DNA of 63,740 bases, filler included, from Octopus bimaculoides (Eukaryota): NCBI RefSeq assembly GCF_001194135.2. It is 4 parts of 4 records of this genome, joined end to end, with 100 filler letters (N's around TTAATTAATTAA, not from the genome) between each part and the next. Parts side by side here need not be neighbours in the genome. Positions count along the whole stretch, not along the records: positions 1 to 13,439 come from NC_068981.1; 3 more parts are not named here. One strand, 5' to 3'. Position 1 is the first letter of the stretch. Each line of letters begins with the position of its first letter. Below the pieces are notes generated by a model that worked only from the letters and a program-made list of their open reading frames with translations, was not told where the DNA came from and made no database searches. Of this stretch, positions 1 to 15,184 are shown in pieces. A program made the position numbers and the translations under genes.

Positions 1-34
<34 letters not shown>

Positions 35-467
35 GCATATAATGATTGCTGTATATATATCAAAAGATATTGCCACAGTAATTAAAAGCTTTGTTGATGA
101 CAGGTTATTTAACTACAACACATTGTAGTAAATCCAGGTAGGTGTACCTTGTATGTATGTACATAGGTGGCTAAAATGATCTTACAGTGCAACATATTTA
201 GAATATAAGTAGAAAAGCATAAATTTCACATATACTTCATACTTTTATTGTCTTCAACAGATGTTTCATTTGGATAAAGATCATTAATTCCATAATACAT
301 AACCGCAATATGCAATTAACGTAAATTAAATTAATTGTACATCACATTTATGGACATTGTGGGATTAAGGATATTTAGTCCAACAAACTAGTTGTTGAAC
401 ACAATTAAAACATGAACTACACGTGAAATTTATGCTCTTCTACTTTTATGCTGTCTCTATATATCAA

Positions 468-770
468 TTATGTATGTGTGCATGTGTGTGTGTGTGTGTG
501 TACTGCCATCTCAATTGCTAAAGTAACTATGTATGCATGTATGCATGTATGTATGTATGTATGCATGTATGTATGCATGTATGTATGTATGTATGCATGT
601 ATGCATGCATGCATGCATACATACATGTATATGTATGTGTACATGTATATGTATATGTACATATGTATATGCCACATGTATATGTATATGCCACATGTAT
701 ATGTATGTGTACATATGTATATGCCACAAAACCTCCCAAAACTAGAAACCATTTTCATATATATGTGTAA
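468..770. repeat. Compound (GT)/(ATGT)/(ATGC) microsatellite with ~20-30-bp higher-order units
   Basis: Direct reading. Similar simple repeats occur throughout, e.g. (ATT)n 4510-4598, (AT)n 6252-6330, (ATCT)n 30700-30765, (AGAT)n 63145-63205. Confidence 0.95.
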
Positions 771-1904
771 AAATTAACACTTCCTTCTCCAAGCCAAGAT
801 TCGAAGCTGAATCTAAGAATTTTTGGTTGTCCAAACCACCACGATCAACAGGCGCGAAAACAGGTTTCCTTTTGTCTAGTCAAAAAGTGATTGATGATCT
901 CCCTTTGACCTTCGACCTAAGGCCATGTCAGGCGGAGTTCAAATGGACAGGAGCTGACCTATTTAGGTACAAACTCTGCTGCAGTATGTCTGTCCTTCTA
1001 GCTGCCACGATTCTTATAAATTCAGTGGTCAACAAGACAGAAGAAGAGAAGGCCCTAGGCAGCCAAACGAGGAAGGTCTACTACATGACAGCTTTTCTCA
1101 GAGACTAGAGCAATGTTCGAAGTTCCACGGTAGACTTACTATCTCAGATGAACTACACACACACACACACACACACATACACGCAAACATATATTCATTT
1201 ATGATATATCACTTCCACAGATGTACCCTGTTTCTATTTCTAGCAACTCGTAGCAGTTGTCAACATTTTGTATATAGTGAAGAATTATGTGTACCAACGA
1301 CAAATTAAGTCTGCTGAATAAATTATATTTAATTATGAATCAATTCACTCATTTGTTTACTTCAAAAGCATACACATTCATACATTCTTTTTGCATCTGG
1401 TTACCATGATACACATTTAACCACTACATATGCATGTGCATATACATGTGTGTTTGTGTGATTGTTTACATTTGCTCGTTGCTGTGATACAAGTGGTGGT
1501 GTTATTGTCATTTCTTCCTGAAAATTAATTTTCAGCTGGCCTTATGCCTTCGAAAATATATAGAGAAAATGATCCCTGAGACAGGTAAGGGTTAGCAATT
1601 GGAAGAGCATCAAGTTGCAAAAACAGTGCTTTAATAATATATTCTTGTAATCCATGCAAGAATGGGAAAATGAACTTTAAAAAATGAATGAACAACTCCT
1701 TTTATCTTTTACATGTTTCAGTCATTGGACTGTGGCTATGCTGAGGCATGATGTTGAAGGGTTTTAAATCCAACAAAATGACCCAGTGCAGTACTTAATT
1801 TGTCAGTCTCTTTTTATCAAAACACTAAGTTAAGGAGACATAAAGAAACAATAATTGTCAAGCAGTGGTGGAGGATAAACATGCACACACACACACACTA
1901 TATA

Positions 1905-1956
<52 letters not shown>

Positions 1957-2222
1957 ATTTATATGTGTGTAAGTGTGTGTGTGCTTCTTCTAGTTAATGT
2001 ATACCAAATCCACTCACATGAGTTTGATCAGTCTGAGTACACCATAGAAGATGTTTGCCCAAAGTGCTACACTGTGGGATTGAACCTGGAACCACGTGCT
2101 TTTGAAGCAAACTTTTTCCCACACAGCCATGCTTATGTATTTAGCTAAAATAGTCAGTCTTTCTATGTTCATTCATTCAGTTTATGTAGCTATACATTGA
2201 CATATTTACTAGTAATTCTTAC

Positions 2223-2243
2223 CAAGTACTGCCATCTCAATTG
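2223..2243 (-). CDS. Candidate 21-nt microexon (QLRWQYL), possible alternative 3' isoform of the minus-strand gene
   Basis: gttactttag|caattgagatggcagtacttg|gtaaga; phase 0-0, compatible with the 63-nt exon. Confidence 0.35.
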
Positions 2244-2624
2244 CTAAAGTAACTATAGTTTTTTTAGTTGAAGCATTGATAGCAATAATTACTCTTCCTA
2301 AACAAGTCAACATTTTGATTGAGAAATTTTATAACATGAACATACGACTTATCAGCTCACTAGTTTGTGTGTGTGTATGTATGTATGTATGTATGTATGT
2401 ATGTATGCATGTATGCATGTATGCATATATGTACGTGTGTGTGTGTGTATCTATATATATTAATGTTTATTTTTATTTTGAGTTTTAATAAAAATAAATC
2501 TTTTTTTGTTTCAGCTGATGGGTTACTCTATACTTTTGTAGAGTACAAATTGTCTGACAATGGCTTAGGTGGCCAAAACTTCGAAGTTCTTGTCAACAAC
2601 AATCTTTTAAGAATAATATATATT

Positions 2625-2658
<34 letters not shown>

Positions 2659-3159
2659 GAGCAACATAATAGCATGTGTTCTCATAATTGTGAAATTTTT
2701 TAATATTACTCAAAAAGTAAGTTGTTTCCTAAAATGTTTATGAAGGTACGTATGCACACACTTACACATGCACACACACACACAAAAACACACACACAAA
2801 AACACACACACTCATATGTATACATATATGTATGAATATAATAAATATGTGTGTGTATATATANNNNNNNNNNNNNNNNNNNNNNNNNNNNNNNNNNNNN
2901 NNNNNNNNNNNNNNNNNNNNNNNNNNNNNNNNNNNNNNNNNNNNNNNNNNNNNNNNNNNNNNNNNNNNNNNNNNNNNNNNNNNNNNNNNNNNNNNNNNNN
3001 NNNNNNNNNNNNNNNNNNNNNNNNNNNNNNNNNNNNNNNNNNNNNNNNNNNNNNNNNNNNNNNNNNNNNNNNNNNNNNNNNNNNNNNNNNNNNNNNNNNN
3101 NNNNNNNNNNNNNNNNNNNNNNNNNNNNNNNNNNNNNNNNNNNNNNNNNNNNNNNNNNN

Positions 3160-3214
<55 letters not shown>

Positions 3215-3519
3215 TGTATATATATTTATTTGGAAAGAGACAGAGGTTGGAAAGAGTGTGGGAGAGTGATTTAATCATATTGTTGATCCAGTGTTGTGCA
3301 ACATATTTTTTGCCAATAGCCAATTATTTAAGGCCAGTCTCTAATAAGATAACACATCCATCACTTCTAGTGTTTCTCTTCTGCCATGATTTTTTTTTCT
3401 TAATGTGTTCTATGTTTCCTTTACCCTCACCTCCACCAATTTTTCTAGTTTGTTTCTCAGCATCGTCACTTCTTGTATTCCTTTTTTTCATTCTGTTGCT
3501 GGTGTTGTTCAATAGAAAT

Positions 3520-3555
3520 TTAGTAAGGTCTTCTATTGGGGTCCATTACATCATA
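3520..3555 (-). CDS. Candidate terminal coding exon (YDVMDPNRRPY*)
   Basis: ttcgtttttaatttttcag|tat gat gta atg ... tac taa; the other two frames stop within 3 codons. Confidence 0.55.
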   Translation of the reverse strand, partial: YDVMDPNRRPY

Positions 3556-4529
3556 CTGAAAAATTAAAAACGAAAAAATGTTCAATCAATATCTCTTGTT
3601 TTAAATATTATTATTGTTGTTGTTGTTGTTGTTGTTTTATTTCAGCTGCTTTAGTACCAGGCATCCTCTGGAGGCCAAGAGTAGCAAGAGCACTTTTATT
3701 TTTGCTATGCATGCTAAAATTATCACCACATTTATTCCATTTTAAATGGAGAGTGTTTTCCATAGTATATGGGCCGTACCAATCAAGGTTATCTTTTGTA
3801 GTTCATGTAGGTTGGATTTACCAAGGTGTTGCTTAATATACTTCTCAGTTCTCTTCTTTATCATTCCCAATGCACCAATTACTACTGGTATTATCATAGT
3901 ACTAAGCTTCCACATTTTTATGATTTCAATTTGCAGATATTTATAGTGAGAAAGCTTTTTATATTCTTTTCTTGAGACATTTTGATCTTGTGGGACTAAC
4001 ATATCAGTTAACAGACAAGTTTCTCAGTTGTAGTCCTTGATCACAATGTCTGGTCAATTGAAGTCAATTTTTCTGTCTATTTGTATTGGGAAGTACCAAC
4101 GGATGGTGACATCCTCGCTATTTACTACATCCTCTGGATGGTGCTTGTACCACTTATCATGGGATTTAATTTTGTAGTATTTACAAGCATTCCAGTGGAT
4201 GCCCTAGTCTGTCATGTCTTATGAGGTACTCCTTTTCAGCAAGGACTGGGCAGCCAGAAACAACATAATCAATTGTCTCTGTGTACTATTACTATTATTA
4301 TTATTATTCAGGCAGTGAGCTGGCAGAATCATCAGCATGCTGGACGAAATTCTTTGTGGTATTTTGCCCGTGGTTATGTTCTGAGTTCATATTCCACAGA
4401 GGTCAACTTTTGGGGTCAATAAATTAAGTACCAGTTGAATACTATGGTTGATATGGTCAACTTACCCCCTCCCCCAAAATTCAGGCCTTGTGCCTTAGCA
4501 GAAAGGATTATCATTATTATTATTATTTA

Positions 4530-4597
<68 letters not shown>

Positions 4598-6248
4598 TTA
4601 TTGTCTTTGCATAGCTTCTAATGCTGGAGATGTACTATGCTGTCAGCTGTTCATTACCAGTGAACTAAGGTAACACTCCTTAATGTATGTATATATGTAT
4701 TTATGTGTGTGTCTGTGTGTATGTATGTATGTATGTAAGTATGTATGCGTGTGTGCATGTGTGTGCGTGTGCGTGTGTGTGTGTGTGTCTGTGTGTGTAT
4801 AAACAACATATATGTATGTATATACTCACACACACACATGCATGTGTGTGTAAGTGTGTGTAAGTGTATGTGTAACAACAACAAAAAAATGAACAACAAT
4901 GAAAAATATTTCAAGCTTTTGACAAACAAGCTGGTCACAGACACAACTCTAGAAAGATAAATAAAAAAAATATAACCCTCAATTGCCAAACAGCATGATA
5001 CTAAATGCAGAATGACAAAACTGATAGTAACCTATCTCAAAGACAACATCAAACTATAGTGTCTAATTCTAATTATTTTTTTTATTTCTTGCAAATGGTC
5101 CAAATTCCAGGAACATATTAACCATCTGGATATATTTTGAACACATAAATTATCATACATACATATCTAAATTCAGTTCCTCTTTTGTGCACAAATGGCT
5201 TTCACCACCAAATGGCTGTGATGCTGCTTTGGCTCTGTTTTATTCACCCAGTTTTTGAGACTATAATGAAGGTGCAAAGACACATGTAAAACAAGTATAT
5301 AGAATCCCAGGAAATAAGTGAAGTACATAAGAGCTTTCTATATTGAAATACTAGCAGGTGGGGTTGATTCGGCGTCTGCTGGACAGGGTGTTATTTTTTT
5401 TGAAAATATTATGGATTTTCATTGTTAAATACATATTCAATGAAAACAATATGACAAGTAAGCATCATGAGCAGGCCAATGATAACTCTAAAATACATTG
5501 TTTCTTCTGACTTGTTCACTTGTTGAGCAACTGTGTTATTGGATGTGAAATGGTTGTTTAAAGAAAAAGAGAAACAGCATAGCTATAATTGTTTTGGCTC
5601 ATCCTAGACAGAGTATGTTGATGTGGTCCACACTTAGCATGAATTTCTATAGGGTGATGTCTACAGGGAAACATGGATGCAGAAGTGCTGGAGACAGTTT
5701 CATTTCCAGGGAGGAGATGAGTTGCTCAGCAGCTTTGAATATGTTTTGGTAGAGATGGTACATAACTTGCTATTTCAGAAACAATATTATTGAAATAAAA
5801 AAGACTATTAGTTTTGATTTGAATATCTTACCATGTGACCATTTGAGGCAACTGAAGATGGGCGTGTTCCAATTTTAGGTCTTACAATTGAATACTGAAA
5901 AAAAAAAGAGAGAATGTATAGAAAAAGATACGTAAATATCATTTTTGCAACACAACTCAAAAAAGGAAAAACAAACAAAACAATATATATATATGATGAG
6001 CTTCTTTCGGTTTCTGCTTACCAAATCCACTCACAAGGCTTTTGGTCGGCCTGAGGCTATAGTAGAAGACACTTGCCCAAGGTGCCATGCAGTGAGACTG
6101 AATCTGGGACCATGTGGCTGGGAAGCAAGCTTCTTACCACACAGCCACTTTTGCATCAATATTTAAAAACAAAAACAAAGATAAAAAATAAAATATGAAA
6201 AATAAACTAATATAATGGCCATAAAATATATTTGTATATTAAGTATTT

Positions 6249-6331
<83 letters not shown>

Positions 6332-7866
6332 GCATATATATATTTGATGGCTGCCAACTCATTAATCGTGTATGACTTTTCTCAACACCAGCACTGGCAG
6401 AGTACATTACACGTAGGCACTAAACTAGTCAAAAACCAACACCACACAAACTTGCAGATAACATGGAGCTAAATATTTACAGTTTAAAATTATTAGATGG
6501 TTATAGATAGTCTACATGTTTTGTGACTGAAAATAACTCTTTAGTCTAACAAAAGATTCACGCATTTTTTTTTTACACCGACAACATGAAAATGCTTGAC
6601 TTCACTGTTAAAGATTGCTAGAAATTGTTATTGTGACGTTTCATGTGCCTTTTCAACTCAGGTTTACTTTTACAGATTCTATTGCAAACAGAGCAAGCTA
6701 ATTTGTCAGAATGCGACTGAGAAAAGTCAGTAGGAGGCCTAAATATGTGCTTCCACCTAAGACTAACTAGGTCAGTTTGGGAGTGACAAATATGGTTGTA
6801 GGTATCACAAGTTAGAGGAGAAGGATCATTGACGGTAAGAAACCCTTTCTTGCCTCTTTTTCATCAGTACATGTTTCTGCTTAACTTCAAACAAGGTAGC
6901 ACCTAGGATTTTTGGTTGGTCCATTGTATCACTCTCCCAATGTGCATGCATCATACTGAAACATTTTTGAGAGCTACTTATCAATTCTTTGAAATGCAAT
7001 TTTGTTTGCATTGAGGCCTTTTTATTTTTTTATCTGGTCATATAACAAGTGTTTGGGCAGGCATTAATCAGATTTCCTTGTCAGATGGCCAGTCCAGTGA
7101 AGTCTGTGTTGATGAATTTCAGTTTCAATGCCCTCCACACCAGCACACTCAAGTACTTCAGAATCTGGAATTTTGTTCATGCCTTTGACATTCAGTATAG
7201 AGTAGGAACATGGCTGATGAACTCACTTGAATAATTTGAGGTGCTTCCTATATACTATCCATGTCTCATAGAAGTAAAGGAAAAGTGAAAGCACACAAGT
7301 GCTGTACACTGCAACTTTTGTGTTTTTGGTAATATCTCTGTAAGACCAAACTTGCCTTTCAAGATTCTTGAAAGCTAGAGATGCTTTTTGAAGACAGTTT
7401 GCTATTTCAGCATCTAAAGAATAAACATGATTCAGTACATTTCAAAGATATGCAAATTTATCTACAACTTTCAGTTCTGTATTTTGAAGAAAAACCTCAG
7501 TTTCAAAATGAGTTGGAAGCTGGTTGAAACATAATAGTTTTAGGCCATACAGGATTCATCAAGTTTAAGCATTAGGTGTGGCATGTCTGATTGAATGGGT
7601 TACCAAGTCACAGTCATCAGCATACAATAAATCTCATATATATATATATATATATATATATTATTTAACAAACACAATATAGGTTTTTATGTGTTACTAT
7701 TAATTTCATGTGTTGAGAACATGTCAAACATTATTTTATAACATGTCATATTCTCAACACATGAAACAAATAGTAGCACATAAGAACATATATTGTGTTT
7801 ATTAAATAATATTTATCTCTTACAAGATGGAGTACTTTTTTTGTTGATCTTACCATCACGGAACAG

Positions 7867-7909
<43 letters not shown>

Positions 7910-10900
7910 AATATTTACTGGGTAATATCCATATAGTGTGCTTTTCAAGGCTCTTTTTCAGGTATCAGCTACCAGATGTTATCATACAGCAGGACTTTTT
8001 CTTTCACTGGATATACATGTGGAAATCATAAGGTATCCACAGAGTATATACAAAAGAATTTTAATATGAGAAGATGGGATGAACAGGCTTTGTTATAAAT
8101 CCCTACAATTGTTTCGGTGGATCATTATCAGCTGGCAATTGCTAAATGCTACATATATGATACCTATTATTGCATTAGTAATAGTTGTATATATTCATGA
8201 CTTCAGGTGAAGGGGGTCTAAAGCACTGCTAGATCATATTTAGTTTCTCTTTGTTTTATATCCACACCATTATGTTATTTTTAGCATTCCGTTGACAAGG
8301 AACAACACGGAAATAGAAAGAAATATATATGAGAAAAAATACTAAAAATAGAATAATGGAAATAGAAATTAAAAAAATAATGAAACCTCTTACTCACTCC
8401 ATCTTTAATCACAGACTTGTTTTGACTTTTAGGAAAATAAATTAACATTCTAAGATAGTGTCATAAAATGATAAACTTGAAGAATTACTTGTCTCTTGTG
8501 TCTGTTATGGTTTCACTTCAAAGGAAATCAGTGGCATATGGTCACTTCCTTAGCATGGAAGGAGACCAAAACCTGTTTGTTGGCGTCCAGACCTAATTTA
8601 GGCTGCATAGTATTAATGTCACGGGTTTTGCAACAGATGCTTTACAAGTCATTAAAAGAGGGTTATAACGCCAAGAAGGGTTGTATGCATCCTTATACAT
8701 ACATACATACATACATACATATATGCAGCATGGTTTCTGTGATGACACCTTAAAAGCATTGGGAGAAGGCTCCAGCACTGACGTCATATACCTTGATTTC
8801 AGCAAGGCATTTGACAGAGTGGACCACAAAATCCTGCTGAAGTAACTGTCCAACATTGGAGTCCATGGAAAGCTGCTACAGTGGATAAAGTGTTTCCTGA
8901 CGAACAGAACCCAACATGTTGTGTTTGAGGGAATATGATCTGGCTTGGTCAAAGTTAGCAGTGGTGTCCCACAAGGTACTGTGTTGAGCCCACTCCTCTT
9001 CATTATTTACATCAACGACATAGTAGATGTCATCAAACATTCTACATTGAAAATTTTGAAGATGATTCCAAACTCCAGAAAGCCATAAACGGCATGGGAG
9101 ACTGAACATGCATTCAGTCAGATCTATTTGCTATTGTCCAATGGCCAGAAAAAAAACAGTATGCTTCTAAATGAAGACAAGTCTGATTTGATCCACTTTG
9201 GAAAAGAGGAAACTCTGAAATTACCATATGTTTTTCCCTCGGGTGACTCTCTAGTGTCATCTAACAAGACTAGAGACCTTGGAATAATTGTTGATAACAA
9301 CCTAAGCTGGAGTTCCCACGTAAACAGCAAGGTTGACTTGGCCCGCAAGATATGCTCCTGGATTCTGAGAACTTTCTGGTCTAGAGATGCTTACACCATC
9401 ATCCTTCTCTACACTACTTTTGCCCAACCCCACCTTGAATATTGTTGTCCACTGTGGTTCCCCCATACGAAACAACTCATTATAAAAGTAGAAGCACTCC
9501 AGAGGTCAATAACAAGAAAGATAGATGGCATGAAAGGCATTGATTATTGGGGTCAACTAAAAAAACTCAATCTCTGCTCTCTCCAACACTGCCGGGAGTA
9601 ATACATCATTTGTGTTATGCGGAAAATATCCCATCAATATTGCACAAATGATGTTGGCATCAATTTTAAAATCCATCTGAGACTTAGCCCCCGTGCTATA
9701 AGCTCATTACAAAAATGGAACTCGGTACACATAACAACATTACATCAAAATTACTATACCTCAACTGGTCCAGCTTTCTTTAATACCATACCAAAATACA
9801 TCAAAACAGAAACGGATCTCATAAAATTCAAATGTTCACTGGACAAATTTCTTCAAAAAATCTCAGACCAAACTCCTACACCCAGAAATGTCTCCAACAA
9901 TAATAACTCTTTGCTAGAGTGGGCCATGGTGCCCCATATATGACTAAAAGACTTTACCAGGTGGTGCTATTGAGTTAAACATAGCCTGGGCCTATACTGG
10001 CCGAAACCTATCAAAGTTATATATATATATATATATATATATTTGCCAGTATCGCCTGACTGGCCTTCGTGCGGGTGGCACGTAAAAGCACCCACTACAC
10101 TCTCTGAGTGGTTGGCGTTAGGAAGGGCATCCAGCTGTAGAAACTCTGCCAAATCAGATTGGAGCCTGGTGTAGCCATCCGGTTGCACCAGTCCTCAGTC
10201 AAATCGTCCAACCCATGCTAGCATGGAAAGCGGACGTTAAACGACGACAATGATGATGATGATGATGATATATAAATAGATATATATACATACATACATA
10301 CATATATATGCATACACACACACCCACACCCACACACATATTGGGTGTATGGGTGTGTGTACCACACATAAATCTATATAAATTTTACAGCCACTTAACA
10401 AGCTCTCTGCTGTCTGTCTGTCTCTGTCTCATTCTCTCTCCCTCCCTCACCCCTCTCTCTGTCTCAACTCCCTGTGAAATTGATTTTGAAGTTTAAGGTT
10501 TGCTTGGAAAAAAGACTCTGCACTAAGGCTTTGTAAGCGTTTTCACACTGACTCATAAACAACAATGTTAAATGAATAAATTAGAATATGTTTATAAAAA
10601 TATTCTTAAAATGGTGGTTAGTAGTTGTTGATTTAAATACTTACATCTTTAGAAGTATCAATATGGCTCAAGTTCGGTTTGAATTCATTTTGAGCGTAGT
10701 ATACTGGTTGCTGTTGTTGTGACTCATAATTAGCTTGCTCATCGTATTCAATGTTTGACATCTTCATTTGGATAAAATATTAACAAATCAAATTATATCA
10801 GGAGATTAAATGCTTAAATATCATTAAAAAGCATATTATTTATAAAGGATATTAAGCTGGTGAGCTGGCAGAATCATTTGCACACTGGACAGTGGCATTT

Positions 10901-11954
10901 CATTTGTCTTTATATCTTGGGTTCAAATTCCTCTGACATTGACTTTGCCTTTCATCCTTTCAGGGTCAATAAGATAAGTATCAGTTCAAGGGATAAGTCG
11001 ATTGCATCGATCCAAAAGTTCAACTGGTACATATTTTATTGACCTTAAAAGGATGAAAGGCAAAATAGACCTTGTCAGAATTTGAACTCAGAATGTAAAG
11101 ACAGACAAAATGCTTCTTAGCAATTTGTCTGGCATGCTAATGATGCTATAAGCTTGCAACCTTATGATTTCAAATTTTTGCACAAGGCCAGCAATTTTGA
11201 GAGAGGGGTAAGTTGATTACATAGATCTCGGTGCTTAACTGGTATTCATTTTATTGACCCCGAGAGAATGAAAGGCAAAGTTGACCTTGGCGGACTTTGC
11301 CCATCCATTCTTTTAGGGATGATAAAGTATGTACCAGTTGAGTACTGGGGTTGATGTAATGGACTATCCCCCTCCCCAAAATTTCAGGCCTTGTGCCTAA
11401 TAATGATAATAATAATAATAATAGGAGGAGATCCCCTTTGGTCATGAATGACCATGGGGTTGCACCTAGAAAGTTACGCTCCCAGGCACAAGTCTGAGCA
11501 ATGTTGTTTGTGGAAGGCCAGCAGTCGCCCATGCATACCAGCCTCCCCTCTTCACACCACTGATGTTATCCAAGGGAAAGGCAAAGGCCGATACAGCTTG
11601 GCACCAGTGATGTCACAACTCATTTCTACAGCTGAGTTAACTGGAGCAACGTGAAATAAAGTGTCTTGCTCAGAACACAACACGCAGCCTGGTCCGGGAA
11701 TCGAACTCACAACCTCACGATCATAAGCTCGAGTCTCTAACCACTGAGCCATGCACCTTCACAGAGAAGGAGGAGGAGGAGGAAGAAGAAGAAGAAGAAG
11801 AAGAAGAAATTATTTAGACTTGCAAACGAAATGGGTGATACATTATAAAGATATAGTTCTTACAGCTTTATTGTCATAAGCATATGCATTCATGATTTCT
11901 GGCTCAAAACCATTGGCTTTCCTTGAAAGTGGGAAACTGTCACTGCCTTGCTCA
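3520..11954 (-). CDS. Candidate uncharacterised multi-exon gene (3' part): Tyr-rich, likely disordered C-terminal region
   Basis: Four exons with compatible phases: 11954-11864 (EQGSDSFPLSRKANGFEPEIMNAYAYDNKA), 10761-10645 (MSNIEYDEQANYESQQQQPVYYAQNEFKPNLSHIDTSKD), 5894-5832 (YSIVRPKIGTRPSSVASNGHM), 3555-3520 (YDVMDPNRRPY*). Three acceptors have long polypyrimidine tracts and all three donors are GTAAG. The 10761 acceptor (aag) is weak. Confidence 0.62.
3690..4285 (-). mobile_element. 3' fragment of an RLE-bearing non-LTR retrotransposon (R4/Dong-like)
   Basis: ETIDYVVSGCPVLAEKEYLIRHD (zinc-knuckle region), PDIVIKD, then KEYKKLSHYKYLQIEI..IIPVVIGALG..ELQKITLIGTAHIL (restriction-like endonuclease end). 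Confidence 0.85.
4312..4505 (+). mobile_element. tRNA-derived SINE (ggcggtgagctggcagaa family), CpG-decayed
   Basis: Aligns to the intact copy at 63666-63740; ends in an (ATT)n tail. Further copies at ~10855, ~11270, 42964 and 63525. Confidence 0.8.
5832..5894 (-). CDS. Candidate minus-strand exon, 63 nt, phase 0 to 0
   Basis: ctctcttttttttttcag|tat tca ... cac atg|gtaaga; only frame 0 is open. Confidence 0.68.
6830..7400 (-). mobile_element. Degraded RTE-clade LINE, RT C-terminal region
   Basis: ILNVKGMNKIPDSEVLECAGVEGIETEIHQHRLHWTGHLTRKSD*CLPKHLLY matches the RTE pattern IL.I.W.D.I...EVL....LRW.GH..RM...RLPK..LY. Confidence 0.8.
7659..7812. mobile_element. Hairpin MITE (~150 bp)
   Basis: Left arm attatttaacaaacacaatat...catgtgttgagaacatg is the inverted complement of right arm catattctcaacacatg...atattgtgtttattaaataat. 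Confidence 0.75.
8750..9945 (+). mobile_element. 5'-truncated CR1/L2-group LINE (RT pseudogene)
   Basis: [58 protein letters not shown]; contains stops and frameshifts. Confidence 0.92.
10035..10270 (+). mobile_element. 3' end of an abundant RTE LINE family, (GAT)n tail
   Basis: gtaaaagcacccactacactc...catgctagcatggaaagcggacgttaaacgacg; same sequence at ~21505(-), 21925(-), 22760(-), 28230(-), 41060(+), 50180(-), 53100(-), 54525(-), 56000(-), 60310(+). Confidence 0.85.
10645..10761 (-). CDS. Candidate minus-strand exon, 117 nt, phase 0 to 0
   Basis: Open 39 codons ending gat|gtaagt; acceptor ttttatccaaatgaag is weak, and an ATG AAG ATG start is an alternative reading. Confidence 0.6.
10855..11420. 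mobile_element. Cluster of inverted SINE copies, including a palindromic pair at 10855-11160
   Basis: gactttgcctttcatcctttc (+) faces aaaggatgaaaggcaaa (-); further - and + copies at 11165-11420. Confidence 0.75.
11425..11762 (-). mobile_element. tRNA-derived SINE with CORE-like central domain
   Basis: A box tggctcagtggtt, B box gagttcgattcc, then ttctgagcaagacacttta..ctcagctgtagaaatgag; second copy at 58827-59160 (+). Confidence 0.8.
11864..11954 (-). CDS. Candidate minus-strand exon, 91 nt, phase 2 to 0
   Basis: ctatattctatgttttag|t gag caa ... aat aaa gct|gtaaga; lies in non-repeat DNA. Confidence 0.65.
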
Positions 11955-12170
11955 CTAAAACATAGAATATAGTGCAAAATAAGACAGAAATGAAAGAAGT
12001 AAAGAATGTCATTTTGTATGTGTGTGTTTGTTGAGATGTAATGATTTAGTTTGCTGCAAATCTCTATGTATGTACATACTTACATACACACACATACATA
12101 CATACATACATACATACATACATGCATACATACATACATACATACATGCATACATATGTACACATACACA

Positions 12171-12214
<44 letters not shown>

Positions 12215-12915
12215 AGGTGCATTCCAGAAATTTTGAAACTTTCTGGAGAGACATTTATTAATTTCAAAGAAATACAAACCTCTAGTTTCCTTCAAATTAG
12301 GATCCTGACTTCAATGTATATGTTGTAGAACTCCAGTCACAACTTTATTGTCCCTAAAAGTTTTAGGCTGTGCAATCGCTGGTGAGGTTCGATTGAGTGG
12401 GAGGTTGCTGTGGAAAGCATGGAAACTACGGACGCAAACCCAGGTGAAATCGAGTGCTAATGCAACAAGCTCATGCAATGGCATTATCGGCATTTTGCAT
12501 GGGCAATGGTTGGTAGTGGGATTCCTTGGTCATGAGTGGACAGCTATCATATATATACATCCTATTATAAATTTCAGTGATGTTCTCTGTCCGTTACGTT
12601 TTTATGTTCGTTAACTTCTCCTAGAACGTTGGTGCAAAGACAAAGAAACTCAAACCAGCAACTCCCCTAATCCCAGGGAATATCCTAAGGGAGTCTATTT
12701 TTTTAAGGGCCACCTAATTGGGGCCCTACTAGCCCCCTATTTTTACTATATTTTAAACTAAATACATGGCATTGGTGACCAAATCGGAGCAATGACAATG
12801 AATTTCATACCATGAACTCCCAGGGAGTATTATAAGGAGGTTCAATTTCTGAAGGACCGCTTTAATGGGGCCCCATTGTTTTTACTACATTTACTTCGCT
12901 CCTACGCTTATTGGT

Positions 12916-13297
12916 GGAGGCGCAGTGGCTCAGTGGTTAGGGCAGCAGACTTGCGGTCATAGGATAGCGGTTTTGATTCCCAGACCGGGCGTTGTGAGTG
13001 TTTATTGAGTGAAAACACCTAAAGCTCCACGAGGCTCCGGCAGGGGATGGTGACGAACCCTGCTGTATTCTTTCACCACAACTTTCTCTCACTATTACTT
13101 CCTGTTTCTGTTGTGCCTGTAATTCAAAGGGTCAACCTTGTCACACTGTATCACGCTGAATATCTCTGAGAACTATGTTAAGGTTACACGTTTCAGTGGA
13201 GTGCTCAGCCACTTGCACGTTAATTTCACAAGTAGGCTGTTCCGTTGATCGGATCAACTGGAACCCTCATCGTCGTAAGCGACAAAGTGCCAACAAC
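12916..13297 (+). mobile_element. Full-length tRNA-derived SINE with (CAA)n tail
   Basis: A/B boxes; highly similar to the copy at 57854-58240. Confidence 0.85.
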
Positions 13298-15184
13298 GTT
13301 TATTGATTAAACTATGATCAGCATCAGTGCTTAGCACATTTGTAGAAATAAGTTCGGGCATTTTAAATACCTTCACGTGCTTCAAACCGAGATAAAGAGT
13401 TATAACAGGTACGTTTCAAGTGTGGTAGTGTCTATATTTNNNNNNNNNNNNNNNNNNNNNNNNNNNNNNNNNNNNNNNNNNNNTTAATTAATTAANNNNN
13501 NNNNNNNNNNNNNNNNNNNNNNNNNNNNNNNNNNNNNNNGGGGAGATCGGTCTTAGCATATCTTTTGACAGGTCACTAAGAGAGAGAGAGAGTTGAAGGA
13601 AGGAAGGACAAACTAACATAGATAGGGAGTTAGGGAGTGTCCATATGCTGGATTCTCAATGCCTACCTTCTCAAAGCTTTTACTAGTCACTGAGAGAGGG
13701 GAAAGGGAGACAGAATATTTCGAAAACTGGACGGATTATTTTTTGCAAGAAAGTAACTATTTTATCTAATTTTCCGATTATATAACAGATCATGCGGTGC
13801 ATAGCTTGCATGTCTGAGAGTGCACGCCACTGGCATGCATATATATGTACATACATGCATACACATTAGTTTTTCACTAAGCTGGAAACAGATGGATGAA
13901 ATAATAAATTAGAGATATTACTCATTGACTCTAATACTGACTGCTACTTTATTTTATTGAGCTCCAAAAGAATTAAGGTAGACTTGATCTTTGCGATATT
14001 TGAACTCAAGACATAACTAAACACCACTGTGCATTTTTTCAGATACTCTAACGATTCTGTTACTTCACTACTAAACTAGTTGCCTGTTTTTAGTGATGGA
14101 TTTTTGTAAAATAAAAAATAAATTGTTGATAAACTACGATCCCAACTTATTTCAAATGTAGGCATAGCTGTGTTCTTGACAAGTTTGCTACATGGTTCTG
14201 GGTTCAATTCCACTTCATGACAACTTGCAAGTGTTTTTTACTGTGGCCTTGGGCTCATTAGTTGTATTGGTAAGTGGAAACTATAGAAACTGACATCTTC
14301 ATACACTGTGTGTGTATGTGTGTGCGCGTGTGCGTGCATGCATGCATGTGTGCATGCGCATGTGCACATGTGTGTGTCTGTCTGTGTGTACTGCTGTAAA
14401 TCAGTGTGCCAAGTCCCATTCCTTTAATTAAAAAAAGTAAAATTTATTTGATAAACAAAGAACTCAAAGGTTGAAAAAGGTTGGAATCAATTTGATCAAC
14501 TAAAACCTTGAAAGCAGTGTCCCAGCATGGCCACAGTCCAATGAGTGAAAACACTAAAAGAGTGTCATTCCTTAGCATTTTTCATTTACCTGTGTAAAGG
14601 GTGGCACAATAGCAGAATTTGTGGAATCCTAAACTCACATAAAGCTTTCATTTAACTGGTCATCATGAGTAGGTGTAAAGATATAAACAGTAATGATAAA
14701 AAACAAAAACAGAAAAGCTAAGCTGTTGCATACAGAAAATAGGCATTTAGAGTAAGACAATGTTCATAGTCTTAGATGTCTTCTTGAATGCTCCTATTTA
14801 AAGATGAGAAGTCTGTCCAGCATAATCCTACATAACACCTTGCCAACAAAAAAAGAAGAGATATTTCATGGTAATTCCCACAGTTATCTTTCCAACCTTT
14901 TTCTAAAAAGAGAACCCCCAAGAGCACATCTTTCCAATCATTTGGGACACACACTTCAATCCAAACTTTTTGCATTTAGACATTGATGTAGTCTTTCACT
15001 TCCACATTTCATGATCTTAGCACAGATACCATTTTAAACAGAGCATTTCCCTGATTCTTTGCCAGGAATTGAAACTTTAGTCTACATCTTTCTGTGAACT
15101 CCTTTTCGTTGTTCTTGGCATTAACACTTAGAAATTTATAAGAGTCAACTGTCATACTTAGATAAGTCCTATTATTTTATCTAA

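What the first reader, a model, noticed from the sequence alone, without database searches (positions are those of the whole stretch)
3520..11954. Unrecognised minus-strand gene encoding a Tyr-motif-rich disordered tail, absent from the ORF track
Four small exons in the few non-repeat islands have strong splice sites and chain in frame: ..EQGSDSFPLSRKANGFEPEIMNAYAYDNKA|MSNIEYDEQANYESQQQQPVYYAQNEFKPNLSHIDTSKD|YSIVRPKIGTRPSSVASNGHM|YDVMDPNRRPY*. About 100 aa contain 9 Tyr, including YxxPhi-type motifs (YSIV, YDVM) and YDNK. This resembles a receptor or adaptor cytoplasmic signalling tail (inference). Two consecutive exons begin exactly with a motif Tyr, which suggests modular, spliceable phosphosites. 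I cannot assign a family. CpG decay of local repeats independently suggests this region is a transcribed gene body.
Basis: partly seen in the sequence, partly recalled or inferred. Interest (0 to 1): 0.72.

Follow-up and report, generated by a model that had tools for sequence, protein, structure and literature searches.

The report
Unproven four-exon chain in octopus DNA
Four short open reading pieces in repeat-rich octopus DNA do join in frame as described, but nothing independent shows they form a gene, similar chains turn up in control DNA, and the tyrosine richness is roughly what AT-rich sequence gives by chance.

Summary

- **Splice sites:** Only exon C has outstanding sites. Exon B's acceptor is weak.
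- **Homologs:** None in 5.8 billion proteins by word search, none in 1.84 billion representatives by phmmer, none in Pfam or PDB. A control query did retrieve an annotated Octopus sinensis protein. No non-repeat frame of 28 aa or more in the window matches any annotated protein.
- **Chance:** Three of those score as high as the claimed chain.
- **Tyrosines:** 9 of 101 against about 5.7 expected from base composition (P=0.115), with no enrichment of motifs.
- **In favour:** A codon-position GC gradient of 0.48/0.37/0.31, P about 0.01-0.02 against a matched null.
- **CpG remark holds:** CpG o/e is 0.32 against 0.74 at another octopus locus, with asymmetric CpG decay in shared repeats. The window probably lies in a methylated gene body.

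My estimates: about 60% a chance chain in intronic DNA, about 25% real unannotated coding exons. The signalling-tail reading has no support. Interest is low.

The parts
11864..11954 (-). Candidate exon A. 91 nt; the first base completes a codon from an unseen upstream exon. Encodes EQGSDSFPLSRKANGFEPEIMNAYAYDNKA. Sites: ttttag| and |gtaaga.
   Evidence: PWM ranks are moderate: acceptor 126 of 707, donor 56 of 770. The open frame continues 42 codons upstream into T-rich sequence. Its coding log-likelihood ratio is in the top 1.5% of matched windows.
10645..10761 (-). Candidate exon B. 117 nt, phase 0-0. Encodes MSNIEYDEQANYESQQQQPVYYAQNEFKPNLSHIDTSKD. Starts with ATG, and an in-frame MKM follows a TAA at 10782-10780.
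   Evidence: The donor gtaagt ranks 12 of 770. The acceptor aatgaag ranks 374 of 707, which is weak. Contains 3 CpG.
5832..5894 (-). Candidate exon C. 63 nt, phase 0-0. Encodes YSIVRPKIGTRPSSVASNGHM.
   Evidence: The T10CAG acceptor ranks 1 of 707 and the gtaaga donor 8 of 770. It is the only candidate that passes strict criteria.
3520..3555 (-). Candidate terminal coding piece D. Encodes YDVMDPNRRPY followed by TAA (3522-3520).
   Evidence: The acceptor tttttaatttttcag ranks 30 of 707.
3225..3230 (-). AATAAA hexamer about 290 nt downstream of the TAA. It is a possible polyadenylation signal if the chain is real, but this hexamer is common in AT-rich DNA.
   Evidence: Read directly. It is followed by (TA)n and an assembly gap.
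1..13439 (.). A CpG-depleted domain covering the whole piece. CpG o/e is 0.32 overall, 0.18-0.21 across 3160-9000, with TpG and CpA in excess. This is consistent with germline methylation of a gene body.
   Evidence: window 0.32 against 0.74 in O. sinensis locus L001; where aligned LINE/SINE copies differ at a CpG, the window copy has the decayed form 27 times against 9. [quoted passage not shown]
8450..10060 (+). Decayed LINE reverse-transcriptase fragment lying in putative intron 2, antisense to the claimed gene.
   Evidence: 74% aa identity to O. sinensis LOC115227543, which carries RVT_1; 82-85% nucleotide identity to L001; weak RVT_1 matches.
6621..7441 (-). LINE 3' portion (RT C-terminal region plus a C2H2 finger ORF at 6860-6621) in putative intron 2, in the same orientation as the claimed gene.
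   Evidence: zf-C2H2 E=1.9e-4. DUF6451 E=0.0024. Assigning it to a LINE is my reading of the translated motifs (inference).
3745..4285 (-). Retroelement-like tail ORFs in putative intron 3, followed by SINE and (ATT)n sequence up to about 4620.
   Evidence: No Pfam match. Calling it a retroelement rests on my own knowledge of similar ORF tails.
10850..11775 (.). A cluster of SINE copies that fills almost all of putative intron 1.
   Evidence: repeat families D7, D8, D10; 72-91% identity to L001 repeats. The tRNA-like head at about 11700-11760 was read. ARAGORN finds no intact tRNA.

Best explanation
The window is repeat-rich, CpG-depleted octopod DNA. It most likely lies inside a germline-methylated transcription unit, as an intron or a flank. 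The four 'exons' are most likely a chance chain. In AT-rich sequence with many T-tracts and GTAAG-like strings, short stop-free hydrophilic frames flanked by AG and GT are common and can usually be linked in frame. The Tyr 'motifs' follow from the abundance of TAT/TAC codons in such DNA. On this reading no protein is made from these pieces. Exon C has very good sites, so it could still be used occasionally as a cryptic exon.

Shown: the sequence facts, the absence of homologs and annotated matches, the frequency of such chains in controls, and the CpG depletion. Inferred: the intronic location and the absence of translation.
For: - **No relatives.** There are none in 5.8 billion proteins by word search. 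In 1.84 billion representatives read by phmmer, the single hit at E=2.6e-4 is a low-complexity repeat protein. Pfam, PDB and JGI metagenome contigs give nothing.
- **Positive control.** The window's RT ORF retrieves annotated O. sinensis LOC115227543, and its GenBank contig could be fetched. Annotated octopus proteins are therefore searchable.
- **No annotated exon in the window.** A concatenation of all 80 non-repeat stop-to-stop frames of 28 aa or more, from both strands, matched no protein at E<=0.1. It included the frames that hold exons A, B and C.
- **Controls.** Candidate density is 4.5 per 10 kb against 3.4-6.7 in controls. 5 of 7 control strands give in-frame 3-exon chains, and 3 of 7 have equal or better site scores.
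- **Weak sites.** Exon B's acceptor and exon A's sites are unremarkable.
- **Composition.** Tyr is 9 of 101 against 5.7 expected, P=0.115. CpG o/e inside the exons is 0.37, equal to the 0.32 background, so nothing suggests constraint.
- **Coding score.** A generic coding log-likelihood ratio is unremarkable for exon B (top 14%) and exon C (top 32%).
Against: - The codon-position gradient GC1/GC2/GC3 = 0.48/0.37/0.31 is positive in all four pieces. Against stop-free, hydrophilic windows of the same lengths from reversed octopus sequence it gives P=0.017 (GC1-GC3) and P=0.007 (G1-G3). Pooled control pseudo-exons show no gradient (0.43/0.47/0.43).
- The peptide has no Cys or Trp and only 2% Leu. 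Its hydrophobic fraction is 0.18 against 0.41 in background frames.
- Exon C pairs the best acceptor on the strand with a top-10 donor.
- Only 1.5% of Markov-1 simulations reach the chain's site score.
- Octopus annotations are incomplete, so absence from them is not proof.
Confidence: 0.6

Rival explanations
1. These are genuine but unannotated coding exons. They would be the last four coding exons, or an alternative 3' end, of an octopod gene whose upstream exons lie beyond position 13439. They would encode a lineage-restricted, disordered, hydrophilic C-terminal tail.
For: - The in-frame, phase-0 chain ends in TAA, with AATAAA about 290 nt downstream.
- The codon-position GC gradient has P of about 0.01-0.02 against a matched null and is consistent across all four pieces.
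- The composition is like a disordered region, with no Cys or Trp.
- Exon C and exon D have good acceptors, and exons B and C have good donors.
- CpG depletion indicates a transcribed, methylated gene body (PMC9476566).
Against: - No protein in nr, UniRef or annotated genomes contains any of these pieces, although O. sinensis proteins are present.
- Methylated octopus genes are reported to be highly and constitutively expressed (PMC9476566). Their constitutive exons should therefore be well annotated.
- Exon B's acceptor is weak.
- Chains of this quality occur in control sequence.
- CpG is not retained in the exons.
- CpG depletion continues for 3.5 kb past the putative stop. That fits an internal position in a larger transcription unit better than a gene end.
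Confidence: 0.25
2. Some of the pieces, above all exon C, are spliced into RNA as cryptic, poison or non-coding exons of the host transcript or of a lncRNA, but they are not translated into a functional tail.
For: - Exon C has the best acceptor and a top-10 donor on the strand, 63 nt apart.
- The window probably lies inside a transcribed, methylated gene body.
- No protein-level conservation or annotation exists.
Against: - The strand of the host transcript is unknown.
- No transcript data are available here.
- The codon-position gradient would go unexplained.
Confidence: 0.12

Closest known systems
Intronic pseudo-exons: open AG...GT segments that mimic exons (general knowledge of metazoan introns)
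   Same: The pieces are short and stop-free, with consensus-like sites, and lie between LINE and SINE insertions. Their density and their ability to chain match control sequence. No annotation or homolog exists.
   Different: The four pieces share a coding-like GC1>GC2>GC3 gradient that control pseudo-exons lack. Exon C's sites are better than those of typical pseudo-exons.
Tyrosine-based signalling and sorting tails: YxxPhi sorting signals, ITAM/ITIM, pYxxM and pYDxV SH2-docking sites as in nephrin or CD28 (recalled from general knowledge, not tested as homology)
   Same: The peptide contains YSIV and YDVM (YxxPhi form), three YD motifs and 9 Tyr in 101 hydrophilic residues.
   Different: No transmembrane segment or upstream domain is in view. 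Tyr frequency is not above the base-composition expectation (P=0.115). Two YxxPhi among 9 Tyr is about what chance gives. YSIV and YDVM are 21 residues apart, which is not ITAM spacing. There is no Pfam, PDB or sequence match to any receptor or adaptor.
Gene-body-methylated regions of Octopus bimaculoides (PMC9476566)
   Same: CpG depletion is strong, TpG and CpA are in excess, and even the embedded LINE and SINE copies show CpG-to-TpG/CpA decay. The paper reports that octopus 5mC sits on the bodies of highly, constitutively expressed genes and is nearly absent from intergenic transposons.
   Different: Methylation itself was not measured here. The host gene, its strand and the species of the window are unknown.

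Membership tests
Coding exons of a real (annotated or conserved) gene | The translation matches an annotated protein or a homolog in some species | tested here: not met
   Searches found nothing. The positive control for octopus proteins worked.
Coding exons of a real (annotated or conserved) gene | The combination of splice sites and open frames exceeds what non-genic DNA of the same genome gives | tested here: not met
   5 of 7 control strands give in-frame 3-exon chains, and 3 of 7 have equal or better site scores. The chain is rare only against a Markov-1 null (1.5%).
Coding exons of a real (annotated or conserved) gene | Codon-position compositional periodicity | tested here: inconclusive
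GC1/2/3 = 0.48/0.37/0.31, P=0.017 and 0.007 against a matched null. This is based on only 101 codons.
Coding exons of a real (annotated or conserved) gene | Spliced transcripts across the junctions, and frame and splice-site conservation in related species | not testable with these tools
   No cephalopod transcriptome or genome collection can be searched by similarity here. Only one O. sinensis contig (L001) could be fetched, through a protein hit.
Tyrosine-motif cytoplasmic signalling tail (ITAM/ITIM/YxxPhi/SH2-docking) | Tyr and Tyr-motif content above the compositional expectation | tested here: not met
   9 Tyr against 5.7 expected, P=0.115. Background frames of the window hold 6.7% Tyr. 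Control pseudo-exons hold 5.5% Tyr.
Tyrosine-motif cytoplasmic signalling tail (ITAM/ITIM/YxxPhi/SH2-docking) | ITAM arrangement: YxxL/I, then 6-12 residues, then YxxL/I | tested here: not met
   The only YxxPhi motifs are YSIV at residue 70 and YDVM at residue 91. They are 21 residues apart and neither has L or I at +3.
Tyrosine-motif cytoplasmic signalling tail (ITAM/ITIM/YxxPhi/SH2-docking) | The tail follows a transmembrane segment or adaptor domain in the same protein | not testable with these tools
   Any upstream exons would lie beyond position 13439. No convincing exon was found in 11955-13439 on the minus strand.
Germline-methylated gene body (octopus mosaic methylation) | CpG o/e well below that of unmethylated DNA, with TpG and CpA in excess | tested here: met
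   CpG o/e is 0.32, TpG 1.37 and CpA 1.43. In L001 CpG o/e is 0.74.
Germline-methylated gene body (octopus mosaic methylation) | Embedded repeat copies show excess CpG-to-TpG/CpA decay relative to copies elsewhere | tested here: met
   27 against 9 decayed sites in three aligned LINE/SINE pairs. Only one comparison locus was used, and the copies may differ in age.
Germline-methylated gene body (octopus mosaic methylation) | Measured 5mC and transcription across the region | not testable with these tools

The most novel reading that the evidence does not exclude
The four pieces are the true 3' end, constitutive or alternative, of a broadly expressed, gene-body-methylated octopod gene that every public annotation has missed. 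They would encode an orphan, octopod-restricted disordered tail whose tyrosines sit at exon starts and could be included or skipped as modules.
Probability: 0.12. Interest if true: 0.4.

Novelty: not a real feature. Interest (0 to 1): 0.15.

Why it matters
If the chain were real, it would be a missed, lineage-restricted C-terminal extension in an octopus gene. That would be a modest annotation gain and a small example of orphan disordered sequence in cephalopods.

As things stand, the useful result is a caution. In AT-rich, repeat-rich octopus DNA, in-frame chains of hydrophilic 'exons' with plausible splice sites and many tyrosines arise readily. Such findings need transcript or cross-species evidence before any functional reading.

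The side observation is solid and may help place the piece in a genome. CpG depletion is strong and extends into the embedded transposons, which points to a methylated and therefore probably highly expressed host gene.

Tried and rejected
1. Homology of the joined peptide. Word-index search, exhaustive phmmer, Pfam, PDB and JGI metagenome contigs gave nothing. P0001 (E=2.6e-4, four stretches in an ETGTEPSLAKA repeat region of a 2441-aa protein) was rejected as a low-complexity artefact.
2. A 3642-aa concatenation of all non-repeat frames, to look for other annotated exons on either strand, gave nothing.
3. Rfam returned only sub-threshold miRNA-like hits on (TATG)n, (TA)n and (CA)n microsatellites. 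No snoRNA or tRNA was found.
4. Reflectin-like reading of YDVMDPNRRPY. I considered this from memory and rejected it. The rest of the peptide lacks the Met/Asp repeats and phmmer found no such hit.
5. Ephrin-B, nephrin, APP or MEGF10-type tails. These were considered from memory only. No sequence support was found, so nothing is filed under them.
6. Exonisation of an antisense SINE poly-A as the source of exon C's T-tract. Rejected because the adjacent SINE (5982-6149) is in sense orientation on the minus strand and ends about 90 nt upstream.
7. A strict splice-site filter (12-nt tract with at least 10 pyrimidines, YAG, GTAAG) leaves only exon C.
8. A generic amino-acid and codon log-likelihood test has low power. 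It did not separate transposon-coding windows from other windows either.
9. Pfam on full six-frame translations was prepared but not run. One search had already covered annotated exons.
Full report
**What is in the sequence.**
- A is 11954-11864: ttttag|T GAG ... GCT|gtaaga.
- B is 10761-10645: aatgaag|ATG ... GAT|gtaagt.
- C is 5894-5832: ttttttttttcag|TAT ... ATG|gtaaga.
- D is 3555-3520: aatttttcag|TAT ... TAC TAA.

All junctions are phase 0. Exon B begins with ATG and has an in-frame MKM just after a stop codon, so it could also be read as a first coding exon. An AATAAA lies about 290 nt past the TAA, at 3230-3225. It is followed by (TA)n and a 296-N assembly gap at 2864-3159.

**Context.** The piece is octopod DNA.
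- Its reverse-transcriptase ORF (9128-9601, plus strand) hits Octopus sinensis LOC115227543 at 74% aa identity.
- Its LINE and SINE copies align at 72-91% nucleotide identity to the O. sinensis contig fetched as L001.
- The putative introns are largely repeats. SINE copies fill 10850-11775. A decayed LINE RT lies at 8450-10060 on the plus strand. A LINE 3' part with a C2H2 finger lies at 6621-7441 on the minus strand. Retroelement-like ORFs lie at 3745-4285 on the minus strand. Microsatellites are frequent.
- The four pieces lie outside all of these.

**Are the splice sites strong?** Partly. I scored sites with a generic metazoan PWM against the window's base composition.
- Exon C has the best acceptor of 707 AG sites on the strand and the 8th best of 770 donors.
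- Exon B's donor ranks 12th and exon D's acceptor 30th.
- Exon B's acceptor ranks 374th. Exon A's sites rank 126th and 56th.
- Under a strict filter only exon C survives.

**Is the chain more than chance?** Not for real octopus DNA.
- At the chain's weakest thresholds, open AG...GT segments number 171 on the minus strand and 158 on the plus strand. Markov simulations give 123 +/- 25.
The minus strand then has 4.5 candidate loci per 10 kb.
- Controls give 3.4-6.7. These were the reversed window, which can hold no biology, and O. sinensis L001 read forward and reversed.
- In-frame chains of three such pseudo-exons exist in 5 of 7 control strands. Their site-score sums are 26.9-41.0, against 31.2 for the claimed chain, and three controls equal or exceed it.
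- Only against a first-order Markov null is the chain rare, at 1.5%. Real sequence is patchier, with T-tracts and purine-rich stretches.

**Tyrosines.** In stop-free frames of DNA with this base composition, Tyr is expected at 5.6%.
- The window's own background frames hold 6.7% Tyr and control pseudo-exons 5.5%.
- Nine Tyr in 101 residues gives P=0.115.
- Two YxxPhi among nine Tyr is about what a peptide with 18% hydrophobic residues yields. The two motifs are 21 residues apart, so they do not form an ITAM.
- The motif reading therefore has no statistical footing. There is also no transmembrane segment or domain in view.

**External evidence.** None supports the chain.
- The joined peptide has no relative in the 5.8-billion-protein word-index search. 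The exhaustive phmmer run over 1.84 billion representatives returned one hit at E=2.6e-4, a low-complexity repeat protein that I discount.
- Pfam, PDB and JGI metagenome contigs gave nothing.
- The negative result carries weight because the database holds NCBI-annotated O. sinensis proteins, as the control search showed.
- I spent the last protein search on a concatenation of all 80 non-repeat stop-to-stop frames of 28 aa or more from both strands. Nothing scored at E<=0.1. No annotated protein of any species in that collection contains an exon-sized frame of this window.

**The CpG remark.** This part of the finding holds.
- CpG o/e is 0.32 over the window and 0.18-0.21 across 3160-9000, with TpG at 1.37 and CpA at 1.43. 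L001 has CpG o/e of 0.74.
- In three aligned LINE/SINE pairs, sites that are CG in L001 and TG/CA in the window number 27. The reverse case numbers 9.
- In O. bimaculoides, 5mC is reported to be nearly absent from transposons and intergenic DNA and concentrated on the bodies of highly, constitutively expressed genes (PMC9476566).
- The window therefore probably lies inside such a gene body.
- This cuts both ways. It raises the chance of being within a gene, but the constitutive exons of such genes should be well annotated, and none is found here.
- The depletion also continues 3.5 kb beyond the putative stop, which fits an internal, intronic position.
- CpG o/e inside the four pieces is 0.37, no higher than the 0.32 background.

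**Evidence for coding.** One result points toward coding.
- GC at codon positions 1, 2 and 3 is 0.48, 0.37 and 0.31. The sign is the same in all four pieces.
- Chains of the same lengths were drawn from stop-free, hydrophilic windows of reversed octopus sequence. They give GC1-GC3 = 0.034 +/- 0.064 (P=0.017) and G1-G3 = 0.033 +/- 0.053 (P=0.007).
- Pooled control pseudo-exons show no gradient.
- The peptide also lacks Cys and Trp and has 2% Leu.
- A generic composition log-likelihood ratio puts exon A in the top 1.5%, B in the top 14% and C in the top 32% of matched windows, but that test has little power.
- These signals rest on 101 codons, come after several tests, and concern frames a reader chose because they looked protein-like. 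They keep the coding hypothesis alive without establishing it.

**Verdict.** It is overstated on splice-site strength and is not beyond chance for this kind of DNA.
- The most likely account (about 0.6) is a chance chain of pseudo-exons within intronic, methylated gene-body DNA.
- A genuine unannotated coding 3' end remains possible (about 0.25).
- Non-coding or cryptic splicing of some pieces, above all exon C, is a third option (about 0.12).
- The receptor or adaptor signalling-tail interpretation has no support.
- Spliced reads and octopod orthologous sequence would settle the matter. Neither is reachable with the tools at hand.

Noticed in passing
window 1-13439 (lowest in 3160-9000): CpG depletion is strong (o/e 0.32, against 0.74 in O. 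sinensis locus L001), with TpG and CpA in excess. The embedded LINE and SINE copies have lost CpGs asymmetrically, 27 sites against 9. This points to germline methylation, which in octopus marks the bodies of highly expressed genes (PMC9476566).
   Followed up: yes
window 8450-10060 (+): A decayed LINE reverse-transcriptase fragment broken by frameshifts and stops. It is 74% aa identical to O. sinensis LOC115227543 and 82-85% nucleotide identical to L001 9813-10933. A second, more divergent copy lies at L001 519-1286.
   Followed up: partly
window 6621-7441 (-): A LINE 3' region in three frames. It ends in an 80-aa ORF (6860-6621) with a canonical C2H2 zinc finger, CSVCNRICKSKPELKRHMKRH (Pfam zf-C2H2, E=1.9e-4, below the curated cut-off).
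   Followed up: partly
window 3745-4285 (-): ORFs that look like a retroelement C-terminal tail (..PDIVIKDYN.., ..IPVVIGALGMIKKRTEKYIKQ..TLIGTAHILWKTLSI). They have no Pfam match. An (ATT)32 array follows at 4507-4602.
   Followed up: no
window 1980-2150, 4403-4511, 5982-6149, 10850-11400, 11557-11760, 12930-13224: Several copies of tRNA-derived SINE families shared with O. sinensis L001 at 72-91% identity. Their heads carry B-box-like GGTTCGATTCC strings, but ARAGORN calls no tRNA and Rfam gives no tRNA hit.
   Followed up: partly
window 2864-3159: An assembly gap of 296 N flanked by (CA)n and (TA)n microsatellites. The putative 3' UTR and polyadenylation region of the claimed gene runs straight into it.
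   Followed up: no
window 528-728, 2366-2458, 4683-4798, 6251-6343, 12073-12213: Long (TATG)n, (TG)n and (TA)n microsatellites produce about 100 sub-threshold Rfam 'miRNA' hits (mir-297, mir-466, mir-3149 and others). All fall below the gathering scores and are artefacts of simple sequence.
   Followed up: yes
window 746-1305 (+): Two overlapping high-entropy open frames of 120 and 113 aa lie in a slightly GC-richer patch. They have no Pfam hit and no match to any protein in the collection. Their origin is unknown, possibly an uncharacterised repeat.
   Followed up: partly
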